Below are positions 10,373 through 53,640 of a DNA stretch of 64,000 nt, in pieces. The DNA lies in IMG/VR virus record IMGVR_UViG_3300031787_007614, positions 1 to 64,000 of that record, one strand, 5' to 3'. Within the stretch, counting starts at the first letter, position 1; the number at the start of each line of letters is the position of its first letter. The translations under genes and the position numbers were made by a program. The notes below the pieces were generated by a model. That model was not told the DNA's origin and made no database searches. It was given only the letters and a program-made list of their open reading frames with translations.

Positions 10373-11446
10373 ATGGACACTGATCTTTACCACGACATTT
10401 ACACTAGCGAAATTTTTGACACCAGCCAATGCATATGGCACGAAAATAATACCATGAATTTCTTTCACAGTTTGTTGATCAAACTGGGATATGAGCCTGT
10501 GCAAGATGGACACAAAACATGGCGCCGTGGAGACCGTACTGTGGTGCTGTGTCTGGTAGACGACTACATCTCTACCACATACGACTATGACACACCAGTG
10601 GCATATCGATTTGATCGCAATACCACAGTGATCACAGACAACTATGTTACCAGTCCAACCTTGTACAAGGTGTTTCAACTGCCATCCAGTTTCTTTGGCA
10701 TCTATCATTATGAACCCAAGCTGACCAATTTCAATCCCACACGCAGATTTAATTTTTCAGTCAATCGCATTGATTCCAAACGCATGTTGACCATGCTGGA
10801 AATTGCGTTGCGTTGTGAAAAGTATCCAGATGCTGAAACGTTGGACTTTATCAATTTCAACTGCTGGAGTTGGGAAGGTGACAATTCCACAGCTGAAGGA
10901 TGCAATCAAAATTTCAGAGATGCCTACGAAAAACTAGAGCCACAATACAAAGCAGTGTATGGTGACACTTTTGAACGCATTGCTCAAACCATGCCATTTA
11001 AAAATCATGACATGTCAGTTGAGCAGGCACACCTCAGTGCTTATGTGAACATGGTAATTGAAACCTACTCCAGTGACAGTTCAATTGCTCTCAGCGAGAA
11101 GATATTCCGTGCATTGGTCACTCCGGCACCCTGGCAAGTGTATGCTGGCCGCCATGCAGTGGCCTATCTGGAAAGTCTAGGATTTGACACACTCAAAGAC
11201 ATTGTCAATCACAGTTACGATGTCATGATGGAAAACAAAACTGCTGCCTATGGTGACAAACTGGTTGAATACATCTTTGCTGGCGCAGATACATTTACCA
11301 AACTCAGTGCTATGGATCGCACAGAACTGCGACATCGTTGCCTTACTGCCAGCAGACAAAATCAAAAGGTGCTCAAAGACATGAGTGCTCGTTGGCCTGC
11401 AGAGTTTGCCGCTTGGTTGCCGGCTGTTATAGACCATATCAAATAA
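10373..11446 (+). CDS. Putative glycosyltransferase, GT10-like paralog 1
   Basis: IET....LSEK..RAL...P.......L..LGF...D..NHSYD motif; TATAAGTA at 10360-10367. Confidence 0.6.
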   Translation: MDTDLYHDIYTSEIFDTSQCIWHENNTMNFFHSLLIKLGYEPVQDGHKTWRRGDRTVVLCLVDDYISTTYDYDTPVAYRFDRNTTVITDNYVTSPTLYKVFQLPSSFFGIYHYEPKLTNFNPTRRFNFSVNRIDSKRMLTMLEIALRCEKYPDAETLDFINFNCWSWEGDNSTAEGCNQNFRDAYEKLEPQYKAVYGDTFERIAQTMPFKNHDMSVEQAHLSAYVNMVIETYSSDSSIALSEKIFRALVTPAPWQVYAGRHAVAYLESLGFDTLKDIVNHSYDVMMENKTAAYGDKLVEYIFAGADTFTKLSAMDRTELRHRCLTASRQNQKVLKDMSARWPAEFAAWLPAVIDHIK

Positions 11447-11447
11447 C

Positions 11448-12989
11448 ATGTGTGGTGTTCTATACGTAAAAAGCACCACTGATATACCGCTAGAAAAGCA
11501 CAACCAAGCTCTAGAAATTTTAAAAGATCGCGGTCCAGATTTTACCTGTTACCAACATCATGGTCGTGTGTTCTGTGCGCAAACAGTTCTGCACATCACT
11601 GGCAACACACAATTTTACAATCGACAGTCAGATGATTTTTTTGCATTCAATGGCGAAATCTACAACTATCGCTGGTTTGGTTCCTACAGCAACGACACTG
11701 AGCTGATGTATCGTGCTGTAAAAGACGCACCAGTAAAAAAACTCAAATACTTTGAAGGACCGTGGGCGTGGGTGTATGCTCAAGGCGACCAAGTGATATA
11801 TGCCACTGATCCACAAGGCGAAAGATGCCTGTACAGATATCAAGACAACAACATACTGATTGTGAGTTCTGAGGTGGCAGCTATTTTGGTATACATCCGA
11901 CCAAAATTACAAGACATTGATTACACAACCAAACACTATCCAATTTGGCAAAACACGCCTTGGCAAGGAATTGAACGATGTGTGCCAGGTGTGATGTATG
12001 ATCAGTCGGGCAACACCACAGTGATTGACAGTATCTTTTCATGGGCCAAACCCAGTAGTATTCAAACATTGGACCAGGCCTGGGAAGAATATCAACCCTT
12101 GTGGGAACGGGTAATCACTGACATGCGGCCAGAAACATCTTATGCCTGCACATTCAGTGGTGGGCTTGATTCTGGCGTGGTTGCAAAAAGTCTTCCACAA
12201 AGTCAGCACTATTATACCACCAACATGCTGGGCAAAGACCCAGTGAGTGAACAATCTCAACGTATGTTGGAAGGCAGTCAACGAGACAAAATCATCAACA
12301 TTGGTGTTACAGAACAGCAATGGGCCGATGCATTTGAGCAAGTGTGTCGTCGCACACTGATGCCAGTTCAAAGCTACAGTTTTGTTGGCCAGTGGATAAT
12401 TGCTCAACACTGCAAAGAACGTGTGTTGTTTACTGGTGTAGGCGCTGATGAACTGTTTGGTGGCTATGGCGTTTACTCACAGCTTGAATACACCACACAA
12501 ACAAGTGCAAGTCCTTACAGTTCATTTGGCAATGACACTCACGCTCAACAACTGTGGCAACAATGTTTGCATGCACATCAAGGTCAAGCAGAGCCAGCCA
12601 CTCTGTTGATGGATTATATCACTCAAATTTGTGCAATAGACATGCGTGGCATTGACGTTTGTACCATGGCACATGGCATTGAACCACGCTCGCCATTTGT
12701 GCATCCTAAGATCATTCGGTTTGCACTTGGCCTTCCCATGCACCTGAGGCGCGGCAAACCTTTGATTCGTCGACAGTTTTTGGCCTCCTGGCCTGAAGAA
12801 ATGATACTTCCCAAAAAAGGATTCACTGGACATTGCAATGATTCATTGCCTTGGATGAAATTCACTGTGCCAGATCAGGCTCGGGCACCACAGTGGAAGC
12901 AAATTGTCAAAACTGGATTTAGATATTATGCCAATCAATATCTTGATCAAACCACTCAGGACTTATCCGCACATGCGGATGTTGCTTGA
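11448..12989 (+). CDS. asnB: Asparagine synthetase-like glutamine amidotransferase
   Basis: MCG N-terminus, RGPD, NGEIYN, SGGLDS, G.GADELFGGY, E.RSPF. Confidence 0.9.
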   Translation: MCGVLYVKSTTDIPLEKHNQALEILKDRGPDFTCYQHHGRVFCAQTVLHITGNTQFYNRQSDDFFAFNGEIYNYRWFGSYSNDTELMYRAVKDAPVKKLKYFEGPWAWVYAQGDQVIYATDPQGERCLYRYQDNNILIVSSEVAAILVYIRPKLQDIDYTTKHYPIWQNTPWQGIERCVPGVMYDQSGNTTVIDSIFSWAKPSSIQTLDQAWEEYQPLWERVITDMRPETSYACTFSGGLDSGVVAKSLPQSQHYYTTNMLGKDPVSEQSQRMLEGSQRDKIINIGVTEQQWADAFEQVCRRTLMPVQSYSFVGQWIIAQHCKERVLFTGVGADELFGGYGVYSQLEYTTQTSASPYSSFGNDTHAQQLWQQCLHAHQGQAEPATLLMDYITQICAIDMRGIDVCTMAHGIEPRSPFVHPKIIRFALGLPMHLRRGKPLIRRQFLASWPEEMILPKKGFTGHCNDSLPWMKFTVPDQARAPQWKQIVKTGFRYYANQYLDQTTQDLSAHADVA

Positions 12990-13633: not shown

Positions 13634-14593
13634 ATGGACTATACATCTTTGTTTGCCAACACACTCTCTGGCTTGGGGTTTGATCTGCATGCAGTTTACA
13701 ACTGCTTTGATCCGCCATATCGTCCAGAAACTGGTTGGCCGTTAAAGTTGCCCAACATTGAATTCAAACACAACACACTGCTGTTGTTGCATTTTCAAGA
13801 TTTCATAACACCATGTCAGGGTCGCATACTTGAACTGGAACAAGTAGAACGCCACTATGGCGCCAATGCACATCGTGTGCTGGTAACTTATTGGAGTCAT
13901 AATTTACAAAAATACTATCAAGGACCAGTGAACCTTATCGAATTCAGCAATCACAACATGGCCACTGTGACTGCTATCCAAGCTCGTGAGTCACAATGGA
14001 CCAATTCAATAAATGCAAAAACTTCAGCATGGCAATGCCTCAATGGTCGCATGTGCTTGCATCGTCGACGTGCTGTGGACATCTTGCAACATTGGCCTAA
14101 TGGTGTGTTAAGTTACGGCAACGACATTCCACTTGATGCTTGGGCTTATGACACCTATCGCGGCACAGAAAACGAAGATAACTTCATGCGACTGTTGCCG
14201 GTATATGCAAAATGTCAAGTGAACATTGTGACTGAAACACAGTATGATGAGCCGCCAGGCATTGTGAGCGAAAAAACATTGATGGCGATGATTGCACAGC
14301 AGGTACCCATTGTGATTGGTCACCAAGGTATTGTGCAAGACTGTAGAGAGCTTGGGTTTGACATGTTTGACGACCTGGTGGACACCAGCTATGATAGCAT
14401 GTCCAATGACGTTCGAGTCGAACAAGCCATAATGAAAAATCAAGATCTCATACTGGGAAAAATTAACCTTGCGCCATACCAAGAGCGACTGCAAAAACAA
14501 AGAAGTTTTTTGCTTGATGAATTTATAACTGGCACACAACAACGGTACATTCAAGACGTTGAACAGTTGGCTAAAAAACTAAGTGCGATTTAA
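13634..14593 (+). CDS. Putative glycosyltransferase, GT10-like paralog 2
   Basis: NIVTET....VSEKT...P......LGFDMFDD..D.SYD. Confidence 0.6.
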   Translation: MDYTSLFANTLSGLGFDLHAVYNCFDPPYRPETGWPLKLPNIEFKHNTLLLLHFQDFITPCQGRILELEQVERHYGANAHRVLVTYWSHNLQKYYQGPVNLIEFSNHNMATVTAIQARESQWTNSINAKTSAWQCLNGRMCLHRRRAVDILQHWPNGVLSYGNDIPLDAWAYDTYRGTENEDNFMRLLPVYAKCQVNIVTETQYDEPPGIVSEKTLMAMIAQQVPIVIGHQGIVQDCRELGFDMFDDLVDTSYDSMSNDVRVEQAIMKNQDLILGKINLAPYQERLQKQRSFLLDEFITGTQQRYIQDVEQLAKKLSAI

Positions 14594-16894: not shown

Positions 16895-17925
16895 TTTAAC
16901 ACTCCTTGATATGTTTGATTCAGCCAGCGACCAATTGGTTCGGCTTGGTCACTCAGCTTGGTAAGCTCATACTTGCCACAGAACTTGAGAAAGTGTGCGC
17001 CCACCATCCCTATGTCTTTGTTACTGACTTGTTCACCAATCACAGCATCCACAGTATCTTTTACTTCTTGTGGTTGTGCAGTAAGGTCAATTAGTGTGAC
17101 ATTGCGTTCGTAGTCTTCGAGCACCTTGTGTTCTTTTTCTTCGTGGTCGGTCCAACGTTGCAACATGAGATTGTTCCAATTGTAGCCTTTTTTGTTGCGA
17201 TCTTCAAATGCTTCTGTAATGCCTACACGATTCTTTGTGCCTTTTACTGGTGCACCAGGGTATGCTGAGAACACATTGTCGCCGGGATCACCGCGCACAC
17301 ATTTCAAGAACAGCACCCATTTCTGATAGTCAGTTGGGGCCACAAAGCTCCGGTCGGCTTTGCCTACTTTGATCTTTGAATTGCTTTCGATTGTGAAACT
17401 CAATTTGTTGCCTTTGGCATCAGTTACGCCATCAATACTGAACAGGTGGTCGTTTATGCCATTGTACAATTGCACATTTGGTGCAACCAACTGAACGAAG
17501 TCTGAATCACTGCTGACAATAATATGTTCATCTTGGGGGTGTAGTGCAATCCAGCGGCCTATGATATCGTCCGCTTCTGCTGTTGCGCAACGAATCACGC
17601 TACAATTTGTTTTCTCAGACAAGTATTTAGTCAGCTCATCATAGGTTTCCCAAAACAACTTGTCCTCTTCTGCTTCAGTTTCACTCATGGCACCACGGGC
17701 CACAGCACGATTAGCTTTGTAGGGCTTGTAGTGATCTTTACGCCAGCTACGCCCTTCTAGTGCAAAAACCACATGGTCTACACCAAAACGCCTAGCTACT
17801 TTATTTGCACTCATCATGGTCAAGTGCAGTGCAAAGCCTAATTTAGTCCATGTGTCGCTGGCCCTGTGTGCTGAATGGCGGGCACGGAAAAACATGTTAG
17901 CAGTATCAATCAGTAGATATTTCAT
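16891..17925 (-). CDS. rnh: 5'-3' exonuclease / RNase H (T4 Rnh/FEN-like)
   Basis: LLID, WRK...YKANR, EADD, SSDSDF.QL, GD..DN. Confidence 0.92.
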   Translation of the reverse strand: MKYLLIDTANMFFRARHSAHRASDTWTKLGFALHLTMMSANKVARRFGVDHVVFALEGRSWRKDHYKPYKANRAVARGAMSETEAEEDKLFWETYDELTKYLSEKTNCSVIRCATAEADDIIGRWIALHPQDEHIIVSSDSDFVQLVAPNVQLYNGINDHLFSIDGVTDAKGNKLSFTIESNSKIKVGKADRSFVAPTDYQKWVLFLKCVRGDPGDNVFSAYPGAPVKGTKNRVGITEAFEDRNKKGYNWNNLMLQRWTDHEEKEHKVLEDYERNVTLIDLTAQPQEVKDTVDAVIGEQVSNKDIGMVGAHFLKFCGKYELTKLSDQAEPIGRWLNQTYQGVLK

Positions 17926-18634
17926 TAGGGCGGTCCAGAAGTTTGTGTTCCTTCAAGTATTGTAACACATATTCCGACCAAAATCTATGACCATCGGCTC
18001 CAAAGTGATAACTTTTGGGATTCACATGCTCAAATCCGTTGTTTTTTAGTATGGCATTCCAACTGTGGTCTCTTGAATATGGCTCAATGTAATGCCCTTG
18101 CCAATCTCTTAGATTAAATAAATCACTAAATGTACTGTTGCCACTGTAGAATAAATGTCGTACATTTAGATCTTTCAACCGACAATGCAGGTGCCATATT
18201 TTGTTATGCCATTCATCTGTTTTTTGAGTCCAGTTGACATCCAAAATGTACTGACGATACCTATCTTCAAGCTCTGGTGGTACCATGTCCACACCACTGG
18301 CGTTTACTTGATAGCATCGGCCTTCATACTCCCATTCTTCTCGTTCCCAAGTGGTCCATTGGATTACCATCACAGTGTCATACAAACGGCTATAGTTCTC
18401 ATGAATCCACTTGTTAGTGGTACGCAGTATGCGGTCATTGCTGGCTGCTGACTCAGCATCACAGTAAAATTCAGTGTTGAGCATTCGGCTCAATTGCTTG
18501 CCCCAGCTGGCTTCCAAGTTGATTGGATGAGGTCTACGGTCAATGCCATATCTACCATCATCCACAGCAAAGCAATCAGGCACCACTGCTTCGGCAGCCG
18601 CTGTATGGCTGCATCCATTTACATACAAGATCAT
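17906..18634 (-). CDS. SGNH/GDSL-like protein, paralog 1
   Basis: NGCSHT, SN.RI, HF...GH. Confidence 0.65.
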   Translation of the reverse strand: MILYVNGCSHTAAAEAVVPDCFAVDDGRYGIDRRPHPINLEASWGKQLSRMLNTEFYCDAESAASNDRILRTTNKWIHENYSRLYDTVMVIQWTTWEREEWEYEGRCYQVNASGVDMVPPELEDRYRQYILDVNWTQKTDEWHNKIWHLHCRLKDLNVRHLFYSGNSTFSDLFNLRDWQGHYIEPYSRDHSWNAILKNNGFEHVNPKSYHFGADGHRFWSEYVLQYLKEHKLLDRPNEISTD

Positions 18635-19107
18635 TTTTGTAGCAGTACTTTTTCGGTCTCTGCGGCAACCACACGCTTGCGCAGGCTACTGGATGAGAAT
18701 GAGTGATCTCGGCCGTTGAATACTAGTTCAATCCCGCGGTCATAGCATTCGTCGCGACCGGTAAAGTCTTTGTGTTCGTATTCTACTCCCAGTACTCGAA
18801 CATCTAATGGCAGAATTAGTAGAAGGTCACGTAGATCTTGTTCGGTTTGGTACACAACAACTTCATCAACGTAACGGCATGCAGCCAGCTGTATCTGTCT
18901 CTCCACAATACTTTGTATCGGACGATTCTTAGTCTCAGGCCTATCGATAGTTGGGTCCGTTTGGAGCCCACAGATGAGGTAGTCACAGTGATTTTTTGCT
19001 TCAGAAAGCATGGCAATGTGGCCTGCGTGGAGCATGTCAAAGGTTGAGAAAGTGATGCCAATTTTTTTGCCTTCTGCTTTGAGTTGTTTGATGTGATTGA
19101 ATATCAT
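18631..19107 (-). CDS. Cytidylyltransferase (TagD-like)
   Basis: FDMLHAGH, ER..QL, VDEV, SSS.LR. Confidence 0.88.
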   Translation of the reverse strand: MIFNHIKQLKAEGKKIGITFSTFDMLHAGHIAMLSEAKNHCDYLICGLQTDPTIDRPETKNRPIQSIVERQIQLAACRYVDEVVVYQTEQDLRDLLLILPLDVRVLGVEYEHKDFTGRDECYDRGIELVFNGRDHSFSSSSLRKRVVAAETEKVLLQK

Positions 19108-19505
19108 GATACCTCGCTCCTGCCATCGCCAAGATCTCGCTTTTGAACATACATGCCGGAGTTCTTGATGGCTTGTTCTTGTTCCCATGTTTCCATCACA
19201 ACATGGCGGCATACATTTTGAAACCAACGGTCAACAATGTCCCCATCAGTGTCTGTAGGTTTCATCATATAGCCAGCCTTTACCAGTCGAGCCACAAAGA
19301 TTTCATTCCAATCCAACTCAAATGCACCTTGATGCAGATTGTCAGGATCCACATCCATACTGAGCACAGCCACGTAAGGTTCTCCCTTTTCAGTAGCAAG
19401 TTGTTTTTCAGTTTTAGCTGGTGGTTCGGCAACTCTAGGCTTAGTGACTTTTTCTACCACAGGTGGTGGTTTCTTTTGAGATTTTTTAAACCAATCAAAC
19501 ATCAA
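19104..19505 (-). CDS. Hypothetical protein
   Basis: FELDWN..FV..L...GY motif. Confidence 0.72.
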   Translation of the reverse strand: MMFDWFKKSQKKPPPVVEKVTKPRVAEPPAKTEKQLATEKGEPYVAVLSMDVDPDNLHQGAFELDWNEIFVARLVKAGYMMKPTDTDGDIVDRWFQNVCRHVVMETWEQEQAIKNSGMYVQKRDLGDGRSEVS

Positions 19506-19678: not shown

Positions 19679-20524
19679 TTATTTGCCCCATCCATTACCC
19701 CAGAGGTCCACATGCAATCGTGGGCTGTACCAATAACCTCGTTTGAGTGCTTCGTCGGCAACGTGAATTCTATTGCCATCATACACACTCACAACACCGC
19801 CAACAGGCATCACAAAAACTGGTCCGCTAAATCCACGGGTTCGATAGTCGTCAACTACTAGATCAAGCTCTTTGAAATCATCAATGTGACCAACAACAAA
19901 CTTCAAATAGGTAACACCGTGAGTTTCGTAATCCCAAATAATGTCAGGTTTGATAGCATCTTCATACTTTTCACCACTGACACTAAGTTTAGGACTTACT
20001 GAGAATGTGATCTCGCCAAACCATTCAGACAGATACTGTTTGAATTCTCTTGTGAGTTCTTGAGTACCATTGGTTTCAAATGTAATGTGTCGCAGTCCAC
20101 GTTCGTGCAACAGATTCAACAGTTCAGGATATGCACGTTGCCAACCTAGCAATGGCTCGCCACCTGTGATCACAAGATGCACTGAATTGCCGTTTGGTTG
20201 TTGCCAGTGGCCATTGGGCAACAGCGCAGCCATTTTGTCAACTAACTCTTGTGCTGTGTATGTGGGACTTAGATGTTTAAAGTCAGGATGCCAACTTGCA
20301 TACGAATCGCATCCTGTATTAACCAACGGGAGCTCTTCAAAAGTCTTGTAGAGATGAACGCTCTTTGCGACGTCATCTGCCTCAGTGCTCTTATCACCGG
20401 GTTGGCATCCAAATCCCGAACACGTAAAGTTGCAACCGAAGGTTCGTAAGAAGATAGAAGGAACTCCAATATAGCGTCCTTCGCCCTGAGCAGAATAAAA
20501 TAGTTCACTTACTTTTAATTTCAT
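19679..20524 (-). CDS. queE: 7-carboxy-7-deazaguanine synthase
   Basis: E.FYS.QGEG, FLR..GCN..C, CDS, ITGGEP, ETNG, SPK, RLH. Confidence 0.95.
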   Translation of the reverse strand: MKLKVSELFYSAQGEGRYIGVPSIFLRTFGCNFTCSGFGCQPGDKSTEADDVAKSVHLYKTFEELPLVNTGCDSYASWHPDFKHLSPTYTAQELVDKMAALLPNGHWQQPNGNSVHLVITGGEPLLGWQRAYPELLNLLHERGLRHITFETNGTQELTREFKQYLSEWFGEITFSVSPKLSVSGEKYEDAIKPDIIWDYETHGVTYLKFVVGHIDDFKELDLVVDDYRTRGFSGPVFVMPVGGVVSVYDGNRIHVADEALKRGYWYSPRLHVDLWGNGWGK

Positions 20525-20527: not shown

Positions 20528-21238
20528 TTATAACCTTGTTACCTTTGACATTCCCGACTTGCGGGGATTCTTATTTAGATTGATACTTTCATCATGCATT
20601 TTAACACGAGTAGATTGTTTTGTCACCCAACCCGGTAATACTGCATCTAAATAGGCCAAATGTTCTTCGGGGCTGGGATGTGGGTCACCGTTTCTATTAG
20701 GATATCCAGTGTTTTTAAATACAGTTTTGTCATACCCTGGTTTGATACTTAAAACCACATTTTCGTACAATCGCATGACATCTCTGTGTTTGCTAACATT
20801 GTCGGACGGAAATGGCATGGCCATTAATTCTACCATACTCAAAAATTCCCATTTTAGATTGTGTCGAGATTCCAGTAGAGTTTTAACTGCTTTGATGCAT
20901 GCCAGATCTCTAATTAGGAATCCTCTTTCATCCATGTGTGTTTTAAGGTATTCTTTGTTAAACACATTGGTTGCGAAGTGTGCATTTCCGGGTGTGTGCC
21001 ATCGACCGTCAACATATCGATCCTCTCGATCTAAACTGGTCCAGCATACAACAACAGTATCTCCGTCACCAAAACAATGCCTTTGATCAGCCTCCATGAC
21101 TGAATTGAAAATATATTGATTTCCTCCTCCTGCCTGGCCCCAATTTTCAAAGTGATCAAATTCTGGAGCAAGACAATCTGCCCAGGTGCTCCAGCGATAG
21201 TTTGTAAAACTACAACCAAACGTAAACAGTCGGCGCAT
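20528..21238 (-). CDS. SGNH/GDSL-like protein, paralog 2
   Basis: FGCSFT, G.GN, D.HP...H. Confidence 0.65.
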   Translation of the reverse strand: MRRLFTFGCSFTNYRWSTWADCLAPEFDHFENWGQAGGGNQYIFNSVMEADQRHCFGDGDTVVVCWTSLDREDRYVDGRWHTPGNAHFATNVFNKEYLKTHMDERGFLIRDLACIKAVKTLLESRHNLKWEFLSMVELMAMPFPSDNVSKHRDVMRLYENVVLSIKPGYDKTVFKNTGYPNRNGDPHPSPEEHLAYLDAVLPGWVTKQSTRVKMHDESINLNKNPRKSGMSKVTRL

Positions 21239-24750: not shown

Positions 24751-25257
24751 TTAAACGAATAGATCTTCCATCCACTCGCGATGGCCTTCTCTAAAAGCCA
24801 TATTGCTCTGTGTTTCGCGCACTTCCACACGATAGCACCAGAGACGCTCTGCTTCACCCGGTCCCCACAGGTCCGGAATGTAAACACCGTTCACATACTT
24901 GTACAGCATGTCTGCCAAGCCTTCACACCCTAAGCGTGGCAGGATTGTGAGTTTGGCCATTTTTTTCTCTTGCAAGAGCTTGTATGTCGCCAGCTCTGGA
25001 TCATCTGCAGACACCAGCAAGGTATGATCAAATTGATCTTCTAATGTCTTTTTAAGTTCTTTGAGACCGCCATAGTCAGCGGCCCAGTTACGCACATCCA
25101 GGTTGTCTGTGCCAAAGTAGAACTTCATTGAGAATGAGTAACCGTGAATTAGATTGCAGTGGCTGTCGGCACGCCATTGACGGTATGCGCAGGGAAAAGC
25201 ATCATGATACTCTTTGGTGCTGGTGTACTTGTATTGTACTGGTTGATTTGTTGCCAT
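24751..25257 (-). CDS. queD: 6-carboxytetrahydropterin synthase
   Basis: C..IHGY, DYG.LK, FDH, E.LA, V.ET. Confidence 0.88.
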   Translation of the reverse strand: MATNQPVQYKYTSTKEYHDAFPCAYRQWRADSHCNLIHGYSFSMKFYFGTDNLDVRNWAADYGGLKELKKTLEDQFDHTLLVSADDPELATYKLLQEKKMAKLTILPRLGCEGLADMLYKYVNGVYIPDLWGPGEAERLWCYRVEVRETQSNMAFREGHREWMEDLFV

Positions 25258-33762: not shown

Positions 33763-33769
33763 CAGCCAC

Positions 33770-39320: not shown

Positions 39321-39321
39321 A

Positions 39322-48101: not shown

Positions 48102-48385
48102 TATAGTATTTCCAACTCGCCGCCGCTGTCTATCATGCCCGGGCCATCAACCACACGCCAATTCAGCTGCTGTATTGACGCTAATGTTCCAGGCAATAAT
48201 TCATAGCGCAACTTGTACTTACCTGGTTCTGCGGCAATTTGAAAAGACTCTTCCAAATGCTGATCACGCCAAACCCAGGTGCGTTCGGTAAACAATTCAT
48301 TATTGACATAAGCTCGGTAGGTTGGAGGGTCAGTCCAACCTTGGCAATAAACTTCGCAAATTACCTTGACAAACTTTTTGTTCAT
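48101..48385 (-). CDS. Hypothetical protein
   Basis: YR.YVN.EL..ERTW; ATAAATA at 48391-48397. Confidence 0.7.
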   Translation of the reverse strand: MNKKFVKVICEVYCQGWTDPPTYRAYVNNELFTERTWVWRDQHLEESFQIAAEPGKYKLRYELLPGTLASIQQLNWRVVDGPGMIDSGGELEIL

Positions 48386-48422
48386 AAAGATATTTATCAT
48401 TAAGTGGGTCTATAAATATTGC

Positions 48423-49469
48423 ATGCTAAAATTGAATGATATACGCAAAGTGCATGTGGAATTGACCACTAGATGCAATGCCAGATGCCCCATGTGCATG
48501 AGAAACTATCGAGGGTATGATTACAATAGTGGATATCCGCTGTGTGAACTCAGTGTTGGAGATTTCAAGAAAATTCTAACTCCTAACGTTTTAGCACAAC
48601 TAATTCAGCCCGATCCGCCCATTGGAGATCGTGTGCCAATCATATATGAATTTAGAGGTGTGGCATTCAATGGAAATCTGGGTGATTTTGCTTCTGCACG
48701 TGATGCTGTTGAAATAGTAGAATACCTGGTAGAGCATCAGGTACCTGTTATTATCAATACCAATGGTTCTGTGCGCAGTCCAGAATGGTGGGCAAGACTG
48801 GCTCTACCCAAAGTTACAGTGGGTTTTGCCATTGATGGCCTAGCAGACACGCATCATTTGTATCGCCAAGACACAGACTGGCATAGAATAATTTCACATG
48901 CTCAAGCACTGATCAACGCTGGTGGACAAGCTGTATGGAGGTTTGTGCCGTTTGATCATAACCGTCATCAGGAACAGGCCTGCAGAGATATGGCTGCCCA
49001 AATGGGCTTTGCAAAGTTTGAAAATATCTATGATGGAAGAGATCGCACGTCGGTATACAATCGAGACGGCACATTCAGTCACAAGATTGGTCCAGACCCT
49101 GGCGGTCTTACCAATCAAACAGTGCATCCTTTTTTGGAAAGTCATATCACTTGGTACGATGCCAAAACAATCACACATCACAAAGATACTCCTGTGCTAG
49201 ACATGCAGTGTCATCACAAACGCAATCGAGAAATATACATAGCTGCCGACGGCTCTGTTTATCCCTGCTGCTTTTTGGGGTTTTATCCGCATACCATGAA
49301 TCATCCCGGCAATCAAGAACTGGCTCCATTAGTAACAGAAAACAATGCATTGGAATATCCTCTTGAACACTGTCTTGAATGGTTTGAACGTGTGGAACAA
49401 ACCTGGAATGAGTCTAGCATTGCGGCTGGCAGAACTTATCAATGTGTAGTAACTTGTAATCGAACATGA
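48423..49469 (+). CDS. Radical SAM protein with SPASM/twitch domain
   Basis: CNARCPMC, TNGS, G.V.PCC, C...C; TATAAATA at 48411-48418. Confidence 0.88.
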   Translation: MLKLNDIRKVHVELTTRCNARCPMCMRNYRGYDYNSGYPLCELSVGDFKKILTPNVLAQLIQPDPPIGDRVPIIYEFRGVAFNGNLGDFASARDAVEIVEYLVEHQVPVIINTNGSVRSPEWWARLALPKVTVGFAIDGLADTHHLYRQDTDWHRIISHAQALINAGGQAVWRFVPFDHNRHQEQACRDMAAQMGFAKFENIYDGRDRTSVYNRDGTFSHKIGPDPGGLTNQTVHPFLESHITWYDAKTITHHKDTPVLDMQCHHKRNREIYIAADGSVYPCCFLGFYPHTMNHPGNQELAPLVTENNALEYPLEHCLEWFERVEQTWNESSIAAGRTYQCVVTCNRT

Positions 49470-49512
49470 ATAAAGATCTACAACAATTCATGAATCAAAT
49501 TGTCAACTTGTT

Positions 49513-50382
49513 ATGACTGTAGCAAGAGTATTGTTCCTAGCAAGATATCGTGTGCCACATGCATGTTTTGCCATGCAGTGGGACCATAATTTACTGGGCA
49601 TAGATTACACCATAATAGCTTCGCCAGTGCCACAGCATGAACTATGGCCAGTGTTTGAACGCTATGGTATTGATACTTCACAGCTAAAGTACATGAATGA
49701 CAGTGTGATATACCAACGCTATCCTGAAGTCAACAACTGGGTGTTTGACCATGACTATCGGGGCTGGTGGTTGCGACAACAAGCAATCAAACTGGCCTAC
49801 CGAGACCTGTTGGAAGAAGATGTCATACTCATGCATGACTGTGACACTTTTATGATTGAACCTTATAGATGCTGGGATGGTGAACAACTGAATTATCTTG
49901 TGATACCTGACACCAAGCACGGCAGTTATCATGGGGTATTTGAAAGCATTACTGGATTGCCAGAGGCCAGCCCGCATTGTTTTGTGTCAGAGCTTGTGCC
50001 TGTACTGCGCACACACTGGCTTGAATTGCGCAAACTGCTGGCCCAACGTTGGCCCAACAAACTGTGGCTGGACGCTATTATTGACGCTGTTCCTGGCATG
50101 CCCACAATACCTCCCTGGGGCACAGGCGAAATAATCAAATGGTTTTCAGAATATGAATTGATAGGAAACTGGGCAGCATGTTGTGATCCCATCAACTACA
50201 CTTTTCAGAAACGTTTTGAATACAATCAATTGGAGCTGTTGTCTACATTGAATGCCAAAGAGTTCAATGCAGTATGTGATGCTGTGCCGGACCTAAGTCA
50301 AAGCATGCAACTTGATTGGGACACATTGGACATACCTAATTTTGAACATTATCAACACATGGTGAAGCAATGTACACAATAA
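49513..50382 (+). CDS. GT-A-like protein (DUF6492-like), paralog 1
   Basis: W..QQ.IKL, DCD, SEY.L. Confidence 0.65.
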   Translation: MTVARVLFLARYRVPHACFAMQWDHNLLGIDYTIIASPVPQHELWPVFERYGIDTSQLKYMNDSVIYQRYPEVNNWVFDHDYRGWWLRQQAIKLAYRDLLEEDVILMHDCDTFMIEPYRCWDGEQLNYLVIPDTKHGSYHGVFESITGLPEASPHCFVSELVPVLRTHWLELRKLLAQRWPNKLWLDAIIDAVPGMPTIPPWGTGEIIKWFSEYELIGNWAACCDPINYTFQKRFEYNQLELLSTLNAKEFNAVCDAVPDLSQSMQLDWDTLDIPNFEHYQHMVKQCTQ

Positions 50383-51497
50383 CATACCCAGCAAAGTTCC
50401 GATATCCTGTGTATCAACCTGCATCACAAAGTATTGATGTCACAGCTGATTGGGGTCTGGGCAGATTTGAAACTACCAACGATCCTGCACTGGCGCTGAG
50501 TCAACCGTGGTCTGTAGCAGCATTTCGTGTGCTGTGCAACGAGCCCGGCGTGTTTGATTATGATCCAGCACTGGCTGACATGGATCTCAGTCAGTTTGAT
50601 TTGGTACTGCTGAGTGACATTGAATACTACAGTGTTAAAGAAATACGTGCCTGGATTGAAAAAAACAAAATTCAACGTTATGTGTTGGCAGTAGGCGGTC
50701 TTGTGCAAGGAGAAGAATTGGATCAATCCTGCATGGTGTATCGCCCTTGGTGGGCTTACAATCTCTTGCGACACAACGAATACCAAGACACCTACCAAGA
50801 TCAAAAACCCTACATGTTTGAAGCACTGTTAGGAGCACGTAGACCGCACCGTGACTATGTGATGATGGCCATGGACAAAACTGGGCTGTTGGATCGTAGC
50901 ATTGTGACCTACAGAGATTGCTTTGAAGGCAAATTGATTGACAGAAACTGTGATCAATTTCAGCAGACTTTTTATGACACTCCGCTAAAGTGGCCTTACG
51001 TGAGTGCAAACTTAAATCCTGCATGGGAAGTCACGGACAACATCACTCGCAGTATCAGTCCATATGTGCCCTGGAACATCTATCAACGCAGTCATTACAG
51101 CATTGTGTGTGAAACACTGGGCACTGGCACAACATTTTTCTGGAGTGAAAAAGTTACCAAGTGTTTGTTAGCCAGAAGAATTTTTGTGTTTTTTGGCGCA
51201 CAAGGATTTCTTGCTCGCATGCGCGAACTAGGGTTTGAAACATTTAGCAGTATCCTTGACGAAAGCTACGATGAACATCCTGTGGACAGCATACGATTTG
51301 AACGGGCCATGCATCAGGTATTGCAGTTGGCATATTTTGAAAATCCCAAAGTGTTGTATGAACGCATACAAGCCATACTGGATCACAACCAAGCTAGATT
51401 GCGCAGTTACCAGATTCAGTTTCAAGCCACAATGTCTGATCTACTGCATCAACACATTGAAGGTGGCCATTGGTTATGGGATGACGAAGTGGGTTGA
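50370..51497 (+). CDS. Putative glycosyltransferase, GT10-like paralog 4
   Basis: SIVCET....WSEK..K......LGFETF...DESYD. Confidence 0.6.
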   Translation: MYTITYPAKFRYPVYQPASQSIDVTADWGLGRFETTNDPALALSQPWSVAAFRVLCNEPGVFDYDPALADMDLSQFDLVLLSDIEYYSVKEIRAWIEKNKIQRYVLAVGGLVQGEELDQSCMVYRPWWAYNLLRHNEYQDTYQDQKPYMFEALLGARRPHRDYVMMAMDKTGLLDRSIVTYRDCFEGKLIDRNCDQFQQTFYDTPLKWPYVSANLNPAWEVTDNITRSISPYVPWNIYQRSHYSIVCETLGTGTTFFWSEKVTKCLLARRIFVFFGAQGFLARMRELGFETFSSILDESYDEHPVDSIRFERAMHQVLQLAYFENPKVLYERIQAILDHNQARLRSYQIQFQATMSDLLHQHIEGGHWLWDDEVG

Positions 51498-52289
51498 AAT
51501 GTGCTGATAGAAGTTTTCAGCAATTTTTTCCTGTCCTTCGGGACCAGAATGATATCCAGGGTCGTCTCCTGAAAATGGGTAACTGCCACATATGGCTTGA
51601 GGACTTTTAGTTGTGTCCAATTGTATGTAGTGATCAGGGATAAGTTTAGGAAACGCATCACGCCATAAGGTATGATTGTCAGGATCGAATGGCCACAGCA
51701 AGTTGGGTAGCACTAAAAACTTGATGTCATCCAAGAACATGGTAATCACACCTTCTCGGATCATCCACTCGTCCTGTTGCTTTTTCCAAGCATTGTCATA
51801 GATTGAATCAATCCAGTGACGTATGCCGTTCTGCGCTTGTTTGGTAATGCGGCCCTGTCTGTACGGATGATCAAAGTTTTCTGCAAGAGTAAAAATAGTT
51901 TCGCAGATCATGTTTGATGGCTCCCGACCATAATTTACATTGCGTATGCCATCTTGTCTGTTGTAGCCATTGCCCAGTTTTCTATTTTGTAGGTGTCGTT
52001 CTAGTGGAGGATTTTCCCCGGCGCTGGGTGCCTGTGACCAATCATATGGCACAGAGTTTGCAGGTATTTCCATACGATCCCAGAAGGTAGGACCAATCAC
52101 AGCAAAGTCTGGACGCTGTCTGCGTATCTCGTCTATTTGTATACGGATGCCGCCGTTTGAACAACCTTGGCGTGCTAGGTTAACCAACTCCCAGCCACCT
52201 AGTTTTTCGGCCAAGCGTTCACTCCAAGCAGTGCCTGGCAAAGTTTGACTCACTGCCGAAAACGAGCAGCCTGCTACCATTAATTTCAT
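51474..52289 (-). CDS. SGNH/GDSL-like protein, paralog 5
   Basis: AGCSFS, NLA..G.SN, YH...G. Confidence 0.65.
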   Translation of the reverse strand: MKLMVAGCSFSAVSQTLPGTAWSERLAEKLGGWELVNLARQGCSNGGIRIQIDEIRRQRPDFAVIGPTFWDRMEIPANSVPYDWSQAPSAGENPPLERHLQNRKLGNGYNRQDGIRNVNYGREPSNMICETIFTLAENFDHPYRQGRITKQAQNGIRHWIDSIYDNAWKKQQDEWMIREGVITMFLDDIKFLVLPNLLWPFDPDNHTLWRDAFPKLIPDHYIQLDTTKSPQAICGSYPFSGDDPGYHSGPEGQEKIAENFYQHISTHFVIP

Positions 52290-52798
52290 AGTGTTTCCTT
52301 GTAACTGTTTCGGTGTTCTTCGCTGTGAAAACTAGCAATAATTTCTTTGTGCATGGGCAATTCGTCTAAGTTGTATGTGCCAGGTGGAATTGTATGTGTA
52401 ACTCCTTCACCAGGCCGTGCAAAAGTTACCAGTCTAGGATGCCACTGCACTGCACGATGTACCAGCACATGATGTATGTGTCCATAGTCTCCTAGTTCGT
52501 CATGGGTGAGCACTAGATCATAATCACGAGCAAGGTGCCAGCAGGCACGGTCGGCAGATTCTTCAGCCCAGCGTGTGAATACTTTTTGCTCGTTGTCATG
52601 CCAGTGGTCTTCAAAGCCCAAAAACACACAGTCGATTCCCCGACGTTTCCAAAACGCCAAAAGTTCTTGGCCTCGGGGATCATGCTCAGTGTACGTTAAA
52701 TAGCCAATGGTCCATTTGTGCTCAGGGTGCGCATGAATATAACTGTAACCAAATATCACACAGTCATCTGGATGCGCTACCATACACAATGCGTTCAT
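52286..52798 (-). CDS. PIG-L/LmbE-family deacetylase
   Basis: AHPDD, TH...G.YGH.HH. Confidence 0.85.
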   Translation of the reverse strand: MNALCMVAHPDDCVIFGYSYIHAHPEHKWTIGYLTYTEHDPRGQELLAFWKRRGIDCVFLGFEDHWHDNEQKVFTRWAEESADRACWHLARDYDLVLTHDELGDYGHIHHVLVHRAVQWHPRLVTFARPGEGVTHTIPPGTYNLDELPMHKEIIASFHSEEHRNSYKETL

Positions 52799-53640
52799 TC
52801 AAGTTCCCAAGCAGCAAAATGGCCGCGATCAATCAACAACATCTTAAATGCAGTTTTTTGTTCTGGTAACATTTTTGACCAAGCATTTCGATGAATACTC
52901 ACTGTGAGAGCATTTTTATCACGCATGAGTTCAAGTTTCTTATCAAACTGGTCAACTTCGCTATGACAAACATTTACCACACCGCCAAGTGTGTTTTGTT
53001 TGGTATAAAAATGATCCAAATGTCCATACTTGTATTGACAAAATCCTGAGTACAACATGAATTCTGTCAGCATGCCTTGGCGCTGAAACCATGTGGGAAA
53101 ACTTTCATGTGTTTTGATTGTGGTATCAGCAATCATAAAGCGTACAGTGTCATTGTGGAAGAAAAATGGCACACCGCCAGGGCCAGCTTGTTTGGTCATG
53201 TTGATGTCAAACAGCTGATCCACAATGTTCTTACTGGGTTTAAAAACATCAAATATATCCAATTGTCCCACAGTAAGCTGACCTTGTTCGTTAACCAATT
53301 TGGATATTTCCAAGGGTCTAACAAATATAGTCTTGGCGTCTAATACCATGGTGTAGACATTGTAACTTATAGACGCGGTGAGAAGTTTTAGAATCTGCTG
53401 GCTTACCCAGCCGTTTGCTATCCAAGCACTGCTGAATGCTGTGCGCGGCACTACCAAGACAGAGCTTGCTAGATCACCCCACCATGCTGGATCAATTTTT
53501 TCCGCTAGGGTTTCGTAATCATTGAGCACCACATAGATATTTCTTATGCCTATGTTGCGACAATAATTGTTTATGCTTTGTGCCTGAATTTTAAGGATCG
53601 GCAGTTCCTGTTCAAATACTACTGTGCAGATATCAATCAT
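52795..53640 (-). CDS. GT-A-like protein (DUF6492-like), paralog 2
   Basis: GW..QQ.LKL, LDAK, TEF.LY. Confidence 0.65.
   Translation of the reverse strand: MIDICTVVFEQELPILKIQAQSINNYCRNIGIRNIYVVLNDYETLAEKIDPAWWGDLASSVLVVPRTAFSSAWIANGWVSQQILKLLTASISYNVYTMVLDAKTIFVRPLEISKLVNEQGQLTVGQLDIFDVFKPSKNIVDQLFDINMTKQAGPGGVPFFFHNDTVRFMIADTTIKTHESFPTWFQRQGMLTEFMLYSGFCQYKYGHLDHFYTKQNTLGGVVNVCHSEVDQFDKKLELMRDKNALTVSIHRNAWSKMLPEQKTAFKMLLIDRGHFAAWELE

What the first reader, a model, noticed from the sequence alone, without database searches (positions are those of the whole stretch)
10373..53640. Expanded glycan-tailoring arsenal built on paralog families
Seen: four GT10-like proteins with a shared E[TS]...SEK...LGF..F...SYD motif (10373, 13634, 29316, 50370), five SGNH-like proteins (17906, 20528, 28655, 33055, 51474), two DUF6492-like, GT2-like, TagD-like, DegT, GalE, sulfotransferase, FkbM, PIG-L, AsnB and radical SAMs. 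Several follow late-type TAA(A/G)TA motifs, and no signal peptides were noticed. Inference: cytoplasmic synthesis of a complex glycan, more likely for virion protein decoration or DNA than for the host surface; SGNH members may be acyltransferases.
Basis: partly seen in the sequence, partly recalled or inferred. Interest (0 to 1): 0.7.

Follow-up and report, generated by a model that had tools for sequence, protein, structure and literature searches.

The report
Jumbo-phage sugar-tailoring gene arsenal
A 364-kb freshwater jumbo phage devotes roughly one gene in seven to soluble sugar-adding and sugar-tailoring enzymes, built mainly on an undescribed virus-only glycosyltransferase family (14 copies), but what these enzymes decorate (virion proteins, phage DNA or the host surface) is still not known.

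Summary
The window is the first 64 kb of a complete 364,404-bp jumbo phage from lakes.

- **SGNH-like genes:** four of the five belong to a 12-copy family with an SGNH fold and invariant Ser and His. The fifth (33055) shows only motif-level likeness.
- **Other calls:** AsnB, GalE, FkbM, PIG-L, cytidylyltransferase, B12-radical SAM and DUF6492 are confirmed.

- The region is a mosaic with replication genes and a 7-deazaguanine pathway (FolE, QueD, QueE, and a candidate DpdA-like transglycosylase at 37027-38565).
- One listed radical SAM is QueE.
- The arsenal is layered. GT4, GalE, a short DegT-like protein, a GT2-like protein and SGNH 17906 are found in every relative examined. FkbM, the sulfotransferase, GT-B 29316 and SGNH 28655 are nearly strain-specific.

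The enzymes are soluble and the phage encodes no export machinery, so a phage-made acceptor is my best guess. The acceptor itself is unproven.

The parts
10373..11446 (+). GT10-like GT-B glycosyltransferase paralog 1 (soft core: in 10 of 14 relatives)
11448..12989 (+). AsnB-like glutamine-dependent amidotransferase with a PP-loop (in 7 of 14 relatives)
13634..14593 (+). GT10-like GT-B paralog 2, with GTAAATA 11 nt before the start codon (in 9 of 14 relatives)
17906..18634 (-). SGNH-family paralog with a DUF6071 match; core (14 of 14 relatives)
18631..19227 (-). Cytidylyl/adenylyl-transferase (TagD / RfaE domain II-like) that would activate a sugar- or polyol-phosphate; core (14 of 14)
19679..20524 (-). 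QueE-like radical SAM (7-carboxy-7-deazaguanine synthase); not a glycan enzyme
20528..21238 (-). SGNH-family paralog (in 8 of 14 relatives)
21241..23223 (-). B12-binding radical SAM, KedN5-like C-methyltransferase (in 9 of 14 relatives)
23220..24089 (-). GT2-like glycosyltransferase (phrog_14945); core (14 of 14)
24751..25257 (-). QueD/PTPS, preceded by a sigma70-like promoter match
27895..28587 (-). FolE, GTP cyclohydrolase I
28655..29365 (-). SGNH-family paralog with weak GDSL matches; strain-specific (0 of 11 relatives)
29316..30317 (-). GT10-like GT-B paralog 3; nearly strain-specific at this junction (1 of 11)
30314..30910 (-). Short (198 aa) DegT/PseC-like protein, about half the usual length but conserved in 11 of 11 relatives
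30885..31847 (-). GalE, UDP-glucose 4-epimerase (above the equivalog cut-off); core
31844..33058 (-). Core, with 88% median identity, equal to PolB. A homologue sits beside FolE in phage Phosso
33055..33966 (-). Doubtful SGNH-like ORF. Motif-level likeness only, and the true start is probably the internal Met at residue 69
34979..35956 (-). FkbM-family methyltransferase; strain-specific (0 of 11)
37027..38565 (-). Candidate DpdA/TGT-like transglycosylase (512 aa, no Pfam match). Core, 75-94% identity across thousands of metagenome proteins
38562..39401 (-). Sulfotransferase-like protein (borderline Pfam match); strain-specific (0 of 11)
48366..49469 (+). Radical SAM/SPASM enzyme, first gene of a conserved six-gene module
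49513..50382 (+). Faint DUF6492-like protein whose end overlaps the start of GT-B 50370
50370..51497 (+). GT10-like GT-B paralog 4, the one modelled (pLDDT 94.9). Orthologues show 41-62% identity
51474..52289 (-). SGNH-family paralog, the one modelled (SGNH fold). Orthologues show 60-88% identity and are very abundant
52286..52798 (-). PIG-L family de-N-acetylase
52795..53640 (-). DUF6492 protein (above the Pfam cut-off)

Best explanation
This is a real, clade-wide, cytoplasmic toolkit for building and tailoring glycans in a freshwater T4-superfamily jumbo phage.

Its workhorse is an undescribed, apparently virus-only family of GT-B glycosyltransferases whose nearest solved fold is GT10 alpha-1,3-fucosyltransferase. 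Each of the 14 copies keeps a conserved C-terminal half, with invariant Glu, Glu-Lys and Tyr-Asp and a near-invariant Arg. By analogy this half is the nucleotide-sugar site. The N-terminal half is much more divergent and is presumably the acceptor site. Different copies would therefore add sugars to different acceptors or linkages.

Other enzymes would supply donors and decorate the product:
- soluble SGNH enzymes (12 copies, Ser/His intact) and radical SAM enzymes, including nine with an N-terminal SPASM/twitch domain that often alternate with GT-B genes;
- a B12-radical SAM C-methyltransferase-like enzyme, FkbM, a sulfotransferase-like protein, PIG-L and AsnB in the window, and a carbamoyltransferase elsewhere in the genome;
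- donor supply from GalE and a cytidylyltransferase.

All are soluble and the phage encodes no export machinery. I therefore infer that the acceptor is a macromolecule the phage makes inside the cell.

The toolkit has two layers:
- A conserved layer (GT4, GalE, short DegT-like, GT2-like, cytidylyltransferase, SGNH 17906) is locked in order with FolE, QueD, QueE, a DpdA-like gene and PolB.
- A faster-evolving, partly strain-specific layer holds the GT10-like, SGNH and radical SAM cassettes plus FkbM and the sulfotransferase.

My best guess for the second layer is decoration of virion proteins. For the first layer it is a nucleic-acid (7-deazaguanine) modification.

Shown: the families, folds, copy numbers, conservation pattern and solubility. 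Inferred: the donors, the order of action and both acceptors.
For: Paralogy and motifs.

Folds:
- The SGNH model matches TesA, GDSL esterases and acetyl-xylan esterases.

GT-B halves: N-terminal part 17% versus C-terminal part 27% mean pairwise identity.

A viral, uncharacterised family:
- 14,433 clusters, none with a name or Pfam match.
- Atlas clusters are 93-100% viral.
- One hit in 185,579 species genomes, and that contig is a phage fragment.

Link to sugar-nucleotide metabolism: Atlas rows fuse the fold to Epimerase/GDP_Man_Dehyd or methyltransferase domains, and a UDP-glucose/GDP-mannose dehydrogenase neighbours a distant member.

GT-B/radical SAM adjacency recurs in this genome and on independent contigs.

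Solubility and no exporters.

Conservation layers in 25 relatives. Module 48.4-53.6 kb is syntenic in relatives.

Placement and timing hints: cassettes lie next to TerL and inside the region where large late-type genes cluster. The upstream motif also found before TerL precedes GT-B 13634, the B12-radical SAM and FkbM, whereas QueD and FolE carry sigma70-like matches.
Against: - No acceptor was identified by any test here.
- Cytosolic GTs can act on undecaprenyl-linked host intermediates that host flippases export. Absence of phage exporters therefore does not exclude a host-surface role.
- The 'late' nature of the motif is unproven. The major capsid gene lacks it, and its sharp peak 11-15 nt before start codons is odd for a promoter.
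- Interleaving with replication and Q genes could simply reflect accessory genes collecting in plastic regions of T4-like genomes.
- Radical SAM/SPASM enzymes usually act on peptides or small molecules, which would fit a glycosylated peptide or metabolite as well.
- GT10 membership fails at sequence level, so a GDP-sugar donor is only an analogy.
Confidence: 0.5

Rival explanations
1. Host-envelope remodelling. The soluble enzymes act on the cytoplasmic face, on undecaprenyl-linked O-antigen or capsule units or on lipid A-core, and the host's own flippases export the altered glycan. This would change the cell surface, for example to block superinfection.
For: This is the published reading of sugar clusters in jumbo cyanophages, which also hold epimerase paralogs, nucleotidyltransferases, several GT families and carbamoyltransferases (PMC7824862). 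The same enzyme classes occur here. Foldseek also lists lipid-A-disaccharide synthase and O-antigen GTs among general GT-B matches.
Against: The phage has no initiating phosphoglycosyl transferase, flippase, polymerase or AT3-like membrane protein. The main GT family looks virus-only rather than host-derived, and its profile is absent from P-SSM2, S-SSM7 and HTVC008M. About 60 genes is a large investment for a lytic phage to alter a cell it is about to kill.
Confidence: 0.2
2. Nucleic-acid hypermodification. The phage replaces G with a 7-deazaguanine through the DpdA-like enzyme, and at least the conserved GT4, GT2, GalE, DegT-like, cytidylyltransferase, SGNH and B12-radical SAM genes, possibly also the GT10-like paralogs, build sugar-bearing decorations on that base in DNA (or on tRNA) to evade restriction.
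For: - FolE, QueD and QueE are present.
- The 512-aa protein resembles viral TGT/DpdA clusters (0.93 and 0.88).
- It keeps DSGGFQ, GW.MGG and SFDCASPF in the same order as LDSGAF, LGGLVG and SCDSSSW in the annotated queuine tRNA-ribosyltransferase (gp03, taken here as DpdA) of phage 9g.
- It occupies the same slot (Pol, clamp-like, X, then FolE, QueD, QueE) as in 9g and PA5oct.
- PA5oct carries a 36%-identical homologue, and its DNA behaves as G-modified (PMC12191111).
- The glycan-type genes are intercalated between the Q genes in an order conserved in all relatives. GT4 is as conserved as PolB, at 88%.
- A GT4 homologue lies beside FolE in the distant phage Phosso.
- Atlas lists tRNA-queuosine mannosyltransferase clusters among GT4's look-alikes.
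- T4 alpha- and beta-glucosyltransferases are among the fold matches of the GT10-like model.
Against: - No HMM or PDB-sequence match to TGT or DpdA. hhalign against the 9g protein is not significant.
- In Phosso the homologue sits by primase and helicase, so it could be a replisome protein.
- No QueC was recognised.
- No ThyA-like hydroxymethylase or TET/JBP.
- No glycosylated deazaguanine is known in DNA.
- Fourteen GTs plus sulfation, carbamoylation and acylation are far more than any known DNA glycan needs.
- PA5oct and the other cultured relatives gave no match to the GT10-like family.
Confidence: 0.2
3. A glycosylated peptide or small-molecule product. The radical SAM/SPASM enzymes, AMP-binding enzyme, carbamoyltransferase, AsnB-like amidotransferase and GTs would make a secondary metabolite or a modified peptide used during infection.
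For: SPASM/twitch radical SAM enzymes are typical of peptide and aminoglycoside pathways. KedN5-like B12-radical SAM, AMP-binding and NodU/CmcH-type carbamoyltransferase proteins are present. A similar idea was raised for a second cyanophage cluster (PMC7824862).
Against: No precursor peptide, NRPS/PKS or exporter was seen. The genes are scattered in small cassettes across 350 kb rather than forming one biosynthetic cluster. Fourteen GT paralogs are excessive for a single metabolite.
Confidence: 0.1

Closest known systems
GT10 alpha-1,3/4-fucosyltransferases (H. pylori FucT, PDB 2NZW/2NZX/2NZY; plant FUT11/FUT13; human FUT9)
   Different: No sequence match to PF00852 even at E 10. About 10% identity in the structural alignment. 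The extra invariant SYD and HN motifs are specific to this family. Viral distribution. Donor unknown.
Sugar-synthesis and modification gene clusters of jumbo cyanophages (P-SSM2-type; Iyer et al. 2021, PMC7824862)
   Same: A large phage carrying paralogous epimerases, HIGH-type nucleotidyltransferases, several GTs, methyltransferases and carbamoyltransferases. Function was inferred from genomics only.
   Different: A different GT family: the profile finds none in P-SSM2, S-SSM7 or HTVC008M. Genes are spread in many small cassettes rather than one 15-gene cluster. SGNH and radical SAM families are massively expanded. The genes are interleaved with a 7-deazaguanine pathway.
Virion glycosylation in mycobacteriophages (Freeman et al. 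2023, cited in PMC12619734) and capsid or fibril glycosylation machineries of giant viruses (the latter from my own knowledge)
   Same: Virus-encoded soluble GTs acting in the cytoplasm on virion proteins, as in the model proposed here for the variable layer.
   Different: Those systems use one to a few GTs of known families, and the glycans have been seen on virions. Here nothing has been observed on virions and the scale is about ten times larger.
Phage 7-deazaguanine DNA modification (DpdA with FolE/QueD/QueE/QueC, e.g. phage 9g; PA5oct inferred G modification)
   Same: FolE, QueD and QueE are present. A candidate transglycosylase sits in the same slot next to the polymerase, with matching motif order.
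   Different: The candidate is 512 aa with no HMM match to TGT or DpdA. No QueC was recognised. GT, SGNH, B12-radical SAM and cytidylyltransferase genes are intercalated between the Q genes, which is not described for known systems.
DNA glycosyltransferases of T-even phages (T4 alpha- and beta-GT) and glycan-diversifying GT arrays on 5hmC (Pyle et al. 2024, cited in PMC12619734)
   Different: No hydroxymethylase or TET route to 5hmC or 5hmU was found. The tailoring chemistry is far richer than any known DNA glycan.

Membership tests
CAZy GT10 / Pfam PF00852 fucosyltransferases | GT-B fold (two Rossmann-like domains) | tested here: met
   AF2 model pLDDT 94.9. All significant Foldseek and VIA matches are GT-B enzymes.
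CAZy GT10 / Pfam PF00852 fucosyltransferases | Significant sequence match to the family profile | tested here: not met
   None of the 14 paralogs matches PF00852 at E<=5. A six-frame genome scan at E<=10 finds nothing. The profile against PDB sequences finds nothing.
CAZy GT10 / Pfam PF00852 fucosyltransferases | A GT10 enzyme is the nearest solved structure | tested here: met
CAZy GT10 / Pfam PF00852 fucosyltransferases | Conserved C-terminal donor motif (acidic residue ... Y-x-T-E-K) and a phosphate-binding Arg | tested here: inconclusive
   E248, E260-K261 invariant and R161 near-invariant in 65 sequences. No residue-level superposition was available, so the equivalence rests on memory of the GT10 motif.
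CAZy GT10 / Pfam PF00852 fucosyltransferases | Uses GDP-fucose | not testable with these tools
   The complex prediction with GDP was not folded. No GDP-fucose synthesis genes were identified. GalE points to UDP-hexoses being available.
SGNH/GDSL hydrolase superfamily | SGNH flavodoxin-like fold | tested here: met
   The model of 51474-52289 (pLDDT 75.9; core >90) matches TesA, GDSL proteins, Axe2 and rhamnogalacturonan acetylesterase, probability 1.0, TM by target about 0.65.
SGNH/GDSL hydrolase superfamily | Block I Gly-Asp/x-Ser nucleophile near the N-terminus | tested here: met
   G7 and S9 are invariant in 12 paralogs and in 30 sequences.
SGNH/GDSL hydrolase superfamily | Block II Gly and block III Asn (oxyanion hole) | tested here: met
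   N37 and G42 are near-invariant at >=90%.
SGNH/GDSL hydrolase superfamily | Block V Asp-x-x-His | tested here: inconclusive
   His247 is invariant. No Asp is conserved three residues before it, so this is possibly a Ser-His dyad.
SGNH/GDSL hydrolase superfamily | Sequence match to Pfam GDSL models | tested here: inconclusive
   Four of 8 members match Lipase_GDSL(_2) and 3 match DUF6071 at E<=1. 20528, 33055 and 51474 have no match at 0.01. 33055 is not recruited by the family HMM.
Phage 7-deazaguanine DNA modification system | preQ0-pathway enzymes FolE, QueD, QueE | tested here: met
   PF01227 at 2.8e-39, PF01242 at 5e-16, and QueE NCBIfam models as best hits, though below their cut-offs.
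Phage 7-deazaguanine DNA modification system | QueC (or Gat-QueC) | tested here: not met
   No QueC-like protein was recognised in the Pfam scans of the region. The only SGGxDS PP-loops are in AsnB-like 11448-12989 and in a 290-aa ORF at 106.7 kb.
Phage 7-deazaguanine DNA modification system | DpdA, a TGT-superfamily DNA transglycosylase | tested here: inconclusive
   No hit to PF01702 or PF23859. For it: Atlas likeness 0.93 and 0.88, motif order shared with the 9g protein and shared gene position. hhalign is not significant.
Phage 7-deazaguanine DNA modification system | Modified G present in virion DNA | not testable with these tools
   No Nanopore run was listed. Only PA5oct, a distant carrier of the homologue, has experimental hints.
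Cyanophage-type surface-polysaccharide clusters | Same glycosyltransferase families | tested here: not met
   The GT10-like profile finds nothing in P-SSM2, S-SSM7 or HTVC008M. The positive control in the own genome finds 14.
Radical SAM / SPASM-twitch enzymes | CxxxCxxC cluster plus an auxiliary Cys-rich domain | tested here: met
   Nine-member family with invariant C147/C151/C154 and N-terminal Cys motifs. Radical_SAM matches 9 of 9 and SPASM 6 of 9. 48366-49469 matches Radical_SAM and SPASM.

The most novel reading that the evidence does not exclude
The conserved array DpdA-like, p177, p147, GT4, GalE, DegT-like, FolE, HIT, QueD, GT2, B12-radical SAM, SGNH, QueE, cytidylyltransferase, SGNH is one pathway. 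It would install a sugar-bearing (and perhaps methylated or acylated) 7-deazaguanine in the phage's DNA. That would be a glycosylated purine hypermodification, a DNA counterpart of mannosyl- and galactosyl-queuosine in tRNA, made with a previously unrecognised 512-aa branch of the TGT/DpdA superfamily that is shared with PA5oct-like jumbo phages.
Probability: 0.15. Interest if true: 0.9.

Novelty: new variant of a known kind. Interest (0 to 1): 0.62.

Why it matters
Phage-encoded glycosylation is known in a few forms: DNA glucosylation, serotype conversion, mycobacteriophage capsid glycans and cyanophage sugar clusters.

Three things stand out here:
- An abundant lake phage lineage spends about 60 genes on glycan chemistry.
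- Most of its glycosyltransferases belong to a very large viral family (14,433 clusters at 50% identity). That family has no Pfam model and no name, and three of its paralogs gave no tblastn match in GenBank phages.
- The family recurs next to radical SAM and SGNH enzymes.

Finding the acceptor would define the function of thousands of 'hypothetical' viral proteins. It could also reveal either heavily glycosylated phage particles in freshwater or a new class of DNA hypermodification.

The candidate DpdA-like protein may also explain how PA5oct-type jumbo phages modify guanine.

Tried and rejected
- **Membership in GT10 by sequence:** rejected.
- **Family present in cultured phages:** tblastn of three paralogs against 50,697 phage records found nothing. 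The profile search of Phosso, Vibrio phage 2.275.O, P-SSM2, S-SSM7 and HTVC008M found nothing.
- **DNA glycosylation through known routes:** no ThyA-like, TET/JBP, TGT or DpdA Pfam match.
- **33055-33966 as a family SGNH:** not recruited.
- **Homology of the two DUF6492-like proteins to each other:** not detectable.
- **The phage as a 'moraphage' (PMC12619734):** no. PolB places it with Phosso, Atu_ph07 and Rak2-like phages.
- **The search for related loci with the 65-sequence alignment:** failed, because no conserved stretch was available.
- **Complex prediction of the GT-B with GDP:** not folded, so it is no evidence.
- **Nanopore runs to look for base-calling errors at modified G:** none listed.
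- **PDB sequence searches with p147, p177, GT4 and the 512-aa protein or its profile:** only chance hits.
- **Metatranscriptome contigs over 49.1-53.5 kb:** short pieces at 93-100% identity exist in two RNA libraries. Depth is tiny and DNA carry-over cannot be excluded, so I do not count this as expression evidence.

Full report
**What the sequence is**

The window is bases 1-64,000 of a 364,404-bp IMG/VR virus record with direct terminal repeats, judged complete. It has no near match among GenBank phages. Its family-B DNA polymerase is closest to Sinorhizobium phage Phosso (51%), Agrobacterium phage Atu_ph07 (47%), Vibrio phage 2.275.O (45%) and the Rak2/CBB/GAP32 group (about 42%). The genome has a T4-type major capsid protein, a T4-type large terminase, UvsX and gp32. 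Near-identical DNA is held by many lake and freshwater metagenomes from about a dozen studies. It is therefore a widespread freshwater jumbo myophage of the T4 superfamily.

**Checking the GT10-like observation**

- All-against-all BLASTP of 439 ORFs puts the four 'GT10-like' genes into the largest paralog family of the genome. There are 14 members, four of them in the window, and a profile scan confirms this.
- No member matches any Pfam family. PF00852 (GT10) finds nothing in the genome even at E 10.
- An AlphaFold model of 50370-51497 is very confident (pLDDT 94.9). Every significant fold match is a GT-B glycosyltransferase. Foldseek's first hit is mango FUT13.
- 'GT10-like' is therefore right for the fold and wrong for sequence-defined membership.

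**Checking the SGNH-like observation**

- Iterative HMM searches within the genome from two different seeds converge on the same 12 proteins. These include 17906, 20528, 28655 and 51474.
- 33055-33966 is not recruited (E 0.12). It has only block I and block V-like motifs after an internal Met.
- Gly7, Ser9 and His247 are invariant, and Asn37 and Gly42 nearly so.
- A model of 51474-52289, a member with no Pfam hit, matches TesA, GDSL esterases and carbohydrate acetylesterases.

Most hold: AsnB, cytidylyltransferase, B12-radical SAM, rSAM/SPASM, GalE (above the equivalog cut-off), FkbM, PIG-L, one good and one faint DUF6492, a borderline sulfotransferase, a PHROG glycosyltransferase at 23220, and a DegT-like protein of only 198 aa.

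- The region is not a glycan island. It also holds PolB, a 5'-3' exonuclease, MazG, HIT, an HhH-GPD protein, ferritin, and FolE, QueD, QueE and a YhhQ-type transporter, that is, a 7-deazaguanine pathway. One of the 'radical SAMs' is QueE.
- An unlisted 404-aa protein (31844-33058) is GT4-like. Its Atlas look-alikes score 0.97-1.00 to viral and bacterial Glycos_transf_1/GT4 clusters, and there is a weak PF00534 match.
- A 512-aa protein (37027-38565) has no Pfam, PHROG or PDB-sequence match but resembles viral TGT-like and DpdA clusters in the Atlas (0.93 and 0.88).
- That protein is among the most conserved of this phage clade: more than 7,000 metagenome proteins, with the best 120 at 78-94% identity. 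It has homologues in PA5oct-like Pseudomonas jumbo phages, Phosso and Vibrio phage 2.275.O.
- Across these homologues DSGGFQ, GW.MGG and SFDCASPF are invariant. The annotated queuine tRNA-ribosyltransferase (gp03, taken here as DpdA) of phage 9g has LDSGAF, LGGLVG and SCDSSSW in the same order.
- The gene order polymerase, clamp-like protein, X, FolE, QueD, QueE is the same in 9g, PA5oct and here.
- PA5oct DNA resists several restriction enzymes in a pattern read as modified G (PMC12191111).
- Against this, profile comparisons are not significant, and in Phosso the homologue lies by primase and helicase. I treat it as a candidate only, at roughly two in three.

**Scale across the genome**

- Beyond the window there are ten more GT-B paralogs and eight more SGNH paralogs.
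- A nine-member radical SAM family has an N-terminal SPASM/twitch-type Cys domain. There is also a three-member small radical SAM family.
- Further copies of epimerase, FkbM and cytidylyltransferase are present, plus a NodU/CmcH-type carbamoyltransferase and an AMP-binding enzyme.
- By my count this is about 60 of 439 ORFs.
- They lie in small cassettes between core genes. One runs TerL, epimerase, SGNH, GT-B, SGNH, rSAM, x, rSAM at 208-216 kb. Another is an alternating GT-B/rSAM array at 316.8-327 kb.
- Conventional GT families are almost absent.

**The GT-B family outside this genome**

- A profile search of 1.84 billion representatives finds 14,433 clusters at E<=0.001 (12,229 at 1e-10), including tandem fusions.
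- None of the listed relatives has a name or Pfam domain.
- Atlas clusters are 93-100% viral. Some fuse the fold to methyltransferase or epimerase/GDP-mannose-dehydratase domains.
- Three paralogs give no tblastn hit in 50,697 GenBank phages. The profile finds none in Phosso, Vibrio 2.275.O, P-SSM2, S-SSM7 or HTVC008M. The same search finds all 14 in the own genome.
- A scan of one genome per 185,579 prokaryote species found one hit, on a 'Haliscomenobacter' MAG contig that is plainly a fragment of a related phage. That scan used only two peptide patterns, so it covers the 50370 orthologue group only.
- GT-B next to radical SAM recurs on independent contigs. One distant member sits by a UDP-glucose/GDP-mannose dehydrogenase.

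**Conservation among relatives**

I compared 25 IMG/VR loci with long flanks around two anchors.

| Layer | Genes (relatives carrying them) |
|---|---|
| Always present, same order | SGNH 17906, cytidylyltransferase, GT2-like, QueD (14 of 14); GT4 (median 88% identity, equal to PolB), GalE, DegT-like, DpdA-like, p147, p177 (11 of 11) |
| Often present | GT-B 10373 (10/14), GT-B 13634 (9/14), AsnB (7/14), SGNH 20528 (8/14), B12-radical SAM (9/14) |
| Absent or almost absent | GT-B 29316 (1/11), SGNH 28655, 33055, FkbM, the sulfotransferase, p307, the 15838 methyltransferase |

At the junctions where the last group is missing, relatives carry other GT-B, SGNH or rSAM paralogs, or unknown ORFs. 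The module rSAM/SPASM, DUF6492-like, GT-B 50370, SGNH 51474, PIG-L, DUF6492 is syntenic in a 347-kb relative and others. SGNH 51474 orthologues are 60-88% identical. The arsenal is therefore old and layered, not a recent burst of duplication. Paralogs are only 17-24% identical to each other.

**Where the chemistry happens**

A hydropathy scan finds no signal-like or transmembrane segment in any GT, SGNH or tailoring protein of the window. Genome-wide there is no large multi-pass protein of the flippase, polymerase or acyltransferase-3 kind.

**Regulation**

- NTAA(A/G)TA is enriched 14-15-fold upstream of genes.
- It precedes TerL and many large genes of the 220-300 kb structural region, and in the window GT-B 13634, the B12-radical SAM and FkbM.
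- Sigma70-like matches precede QueD and FolE.
- The motif is not found before the capsid gene, and it peaks sharply 11-15 nt before start codons. Its meaning is therefore open.

**Interpretation**

Shown:
- a soluble, clade-wide, layered glycan toolkit;
- a new viral GT-B family with a GT10-like fold as its centre;
- divergent N-terminal and conserved C-terminal halves (17% versus 27% identity).

Inferred:
- sequential sugar addition to different acceptors or linkages;
- donor supply from GalE and the cytidylyltransferase;
- tailoring by SGNH, radical SAM, methyl-, sulfo-, carbamoyl- and amido-transferases.

The acceptor is unknown. I favour phage-made macromolecules (0.5 overall). Virion proteins are the more likely target of the variable cassettes, because the tailoring chemistry is surface-glycan-like, some cassettes lie in the structural region, and some follow the motif also found before TerL. 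A nucleic-acid target is possible for the conserved array that is locked between the Q genes.

Host-surface remodelling is the published reading for cyanophage clusters (PMC7824862). It remains a serious rival (0.2), as does an all-DNA reading (0.2). A metabolite or glycopeptide product is less likely (0.1).

**Novelty**

Phage sugar clusters are known, so this is a new variant of a known kind. The new parts are:
- the size and layering of the arsenal;
- the uncharacterised and very large viral GT family;
- its recurrent pairing with radical SAM and SGNH enzymes;
- the conserved intercalation of glycan-type genes in a deazaguanine pathway with a possible new DpdA branch.

Noticed in passing
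window 37027-38565 (-): A 512-aa protein with no Pfam match, conserved at 75-94% identity across thousands of metagenome proteins. It looks like a divergent TGT/DpdA transglycosylase: Atlas scores 0.93 and 0.88, and the DSGGFQ, GW.MGG and SFDCASPF motifs come in the same order as in the phage 9g protein taken here as DpdA (gp03). Homologues in PA5oct, Phosso and Vibrio phage 2.275.O are all annotated as hypothetical.
   Followed up: partly
whole genome; window examples at 13634, 14934, 21241: NTAA(A/G)TA is enriched 14-15-fold upstream of genes, with a sharp peak starting 11-15 nt before the start codon (36 cases in one 5-nt bin) and a broad hump at -40 to -25. It sometimes lies inside the upstream gene. 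It precedes TerL but not the capsid gene. It could be a late promoter giving near-leaderless mRNAs, or a translation signal.
   Followed up: partly
window 799-4090 (-): A cluster of five tRNA genes (Asp, Glu, Leu, Arg, Met) and a permuted (two-piece) tmRNA with tag ANDEKFLMAA, close to the genome end.
   Followed up: no
G000 316,809-327,069 (L018:809-11069): A strictly alternating array: SGNH, GT-B, rSAM, GT-B, rSAM, rSAM, rSAM, GT-B, rSAM. A carbamoyltransferase (328,837-330,327) follows it and an AMP-binding enzyme (315,727-316,812) precedes it. The rSAM(405), GT-B(337), rSAM(429) triplet recurs on an unrelated lake contig (L030).
   Followed up: partly
window 30314-30910 (-): The DegT/PseC-like protein is only 198 aa, about half the usual length, yet it is present at 66-86% identity in all 11 relatives examined. 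It is therefore a conserved short form and not a fresh pseudogene.
   Followed up: partly
window 11448-12989 (+): No QueC was recognised in the genome. This AsnB-like amidotransferase carries one of only two SGGxDS PP-loops. It could in principle amidate 7-carboxy-7-deazaguanine, which is speculation. It is present in 7 of 14 relatives.
   Followed up: no
L194 (NZ_JBBAKG010000058.1, 'Haliscomenobacter sp.' MAG): This 39-kb MAG contig carries p241, ferritin, p99, rSAM, DUF6492-like, GT-B, SGNH, PIG-L and DUF6492 in the same order as window 46.7-53.6 kb. It is a phage fragment binned with a bacterium, which is either contamination or a weak host hint.
   Followed up: partly
window 24751-25257 and 27895-28587 (-): QueD and FolE are preceded by sigma70-like promoter matches (TGnTATAAT, or TTGAC-N15-19-TAnAAT). 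The neighbouring glycan-type genes are not. This hints at separate timing within the array.
   Followed up: no
window 49,137-53,532: Two metatranscriptome libraries labelled marine hold short contigs at 93-100% identity over the DUF6492-like, GT-B, SGNH and DUF6492 genes. Depth is very low and DNA carry-over is not excluded.
   Followed up: partly
window 43776-44840; G000 140,498-141,415 and 331,698-332,738: A three-member family of unknown function. Two of its copies directly abut GT-B paralogs, so it may be a further part of the cassettes.
   Followed up: no
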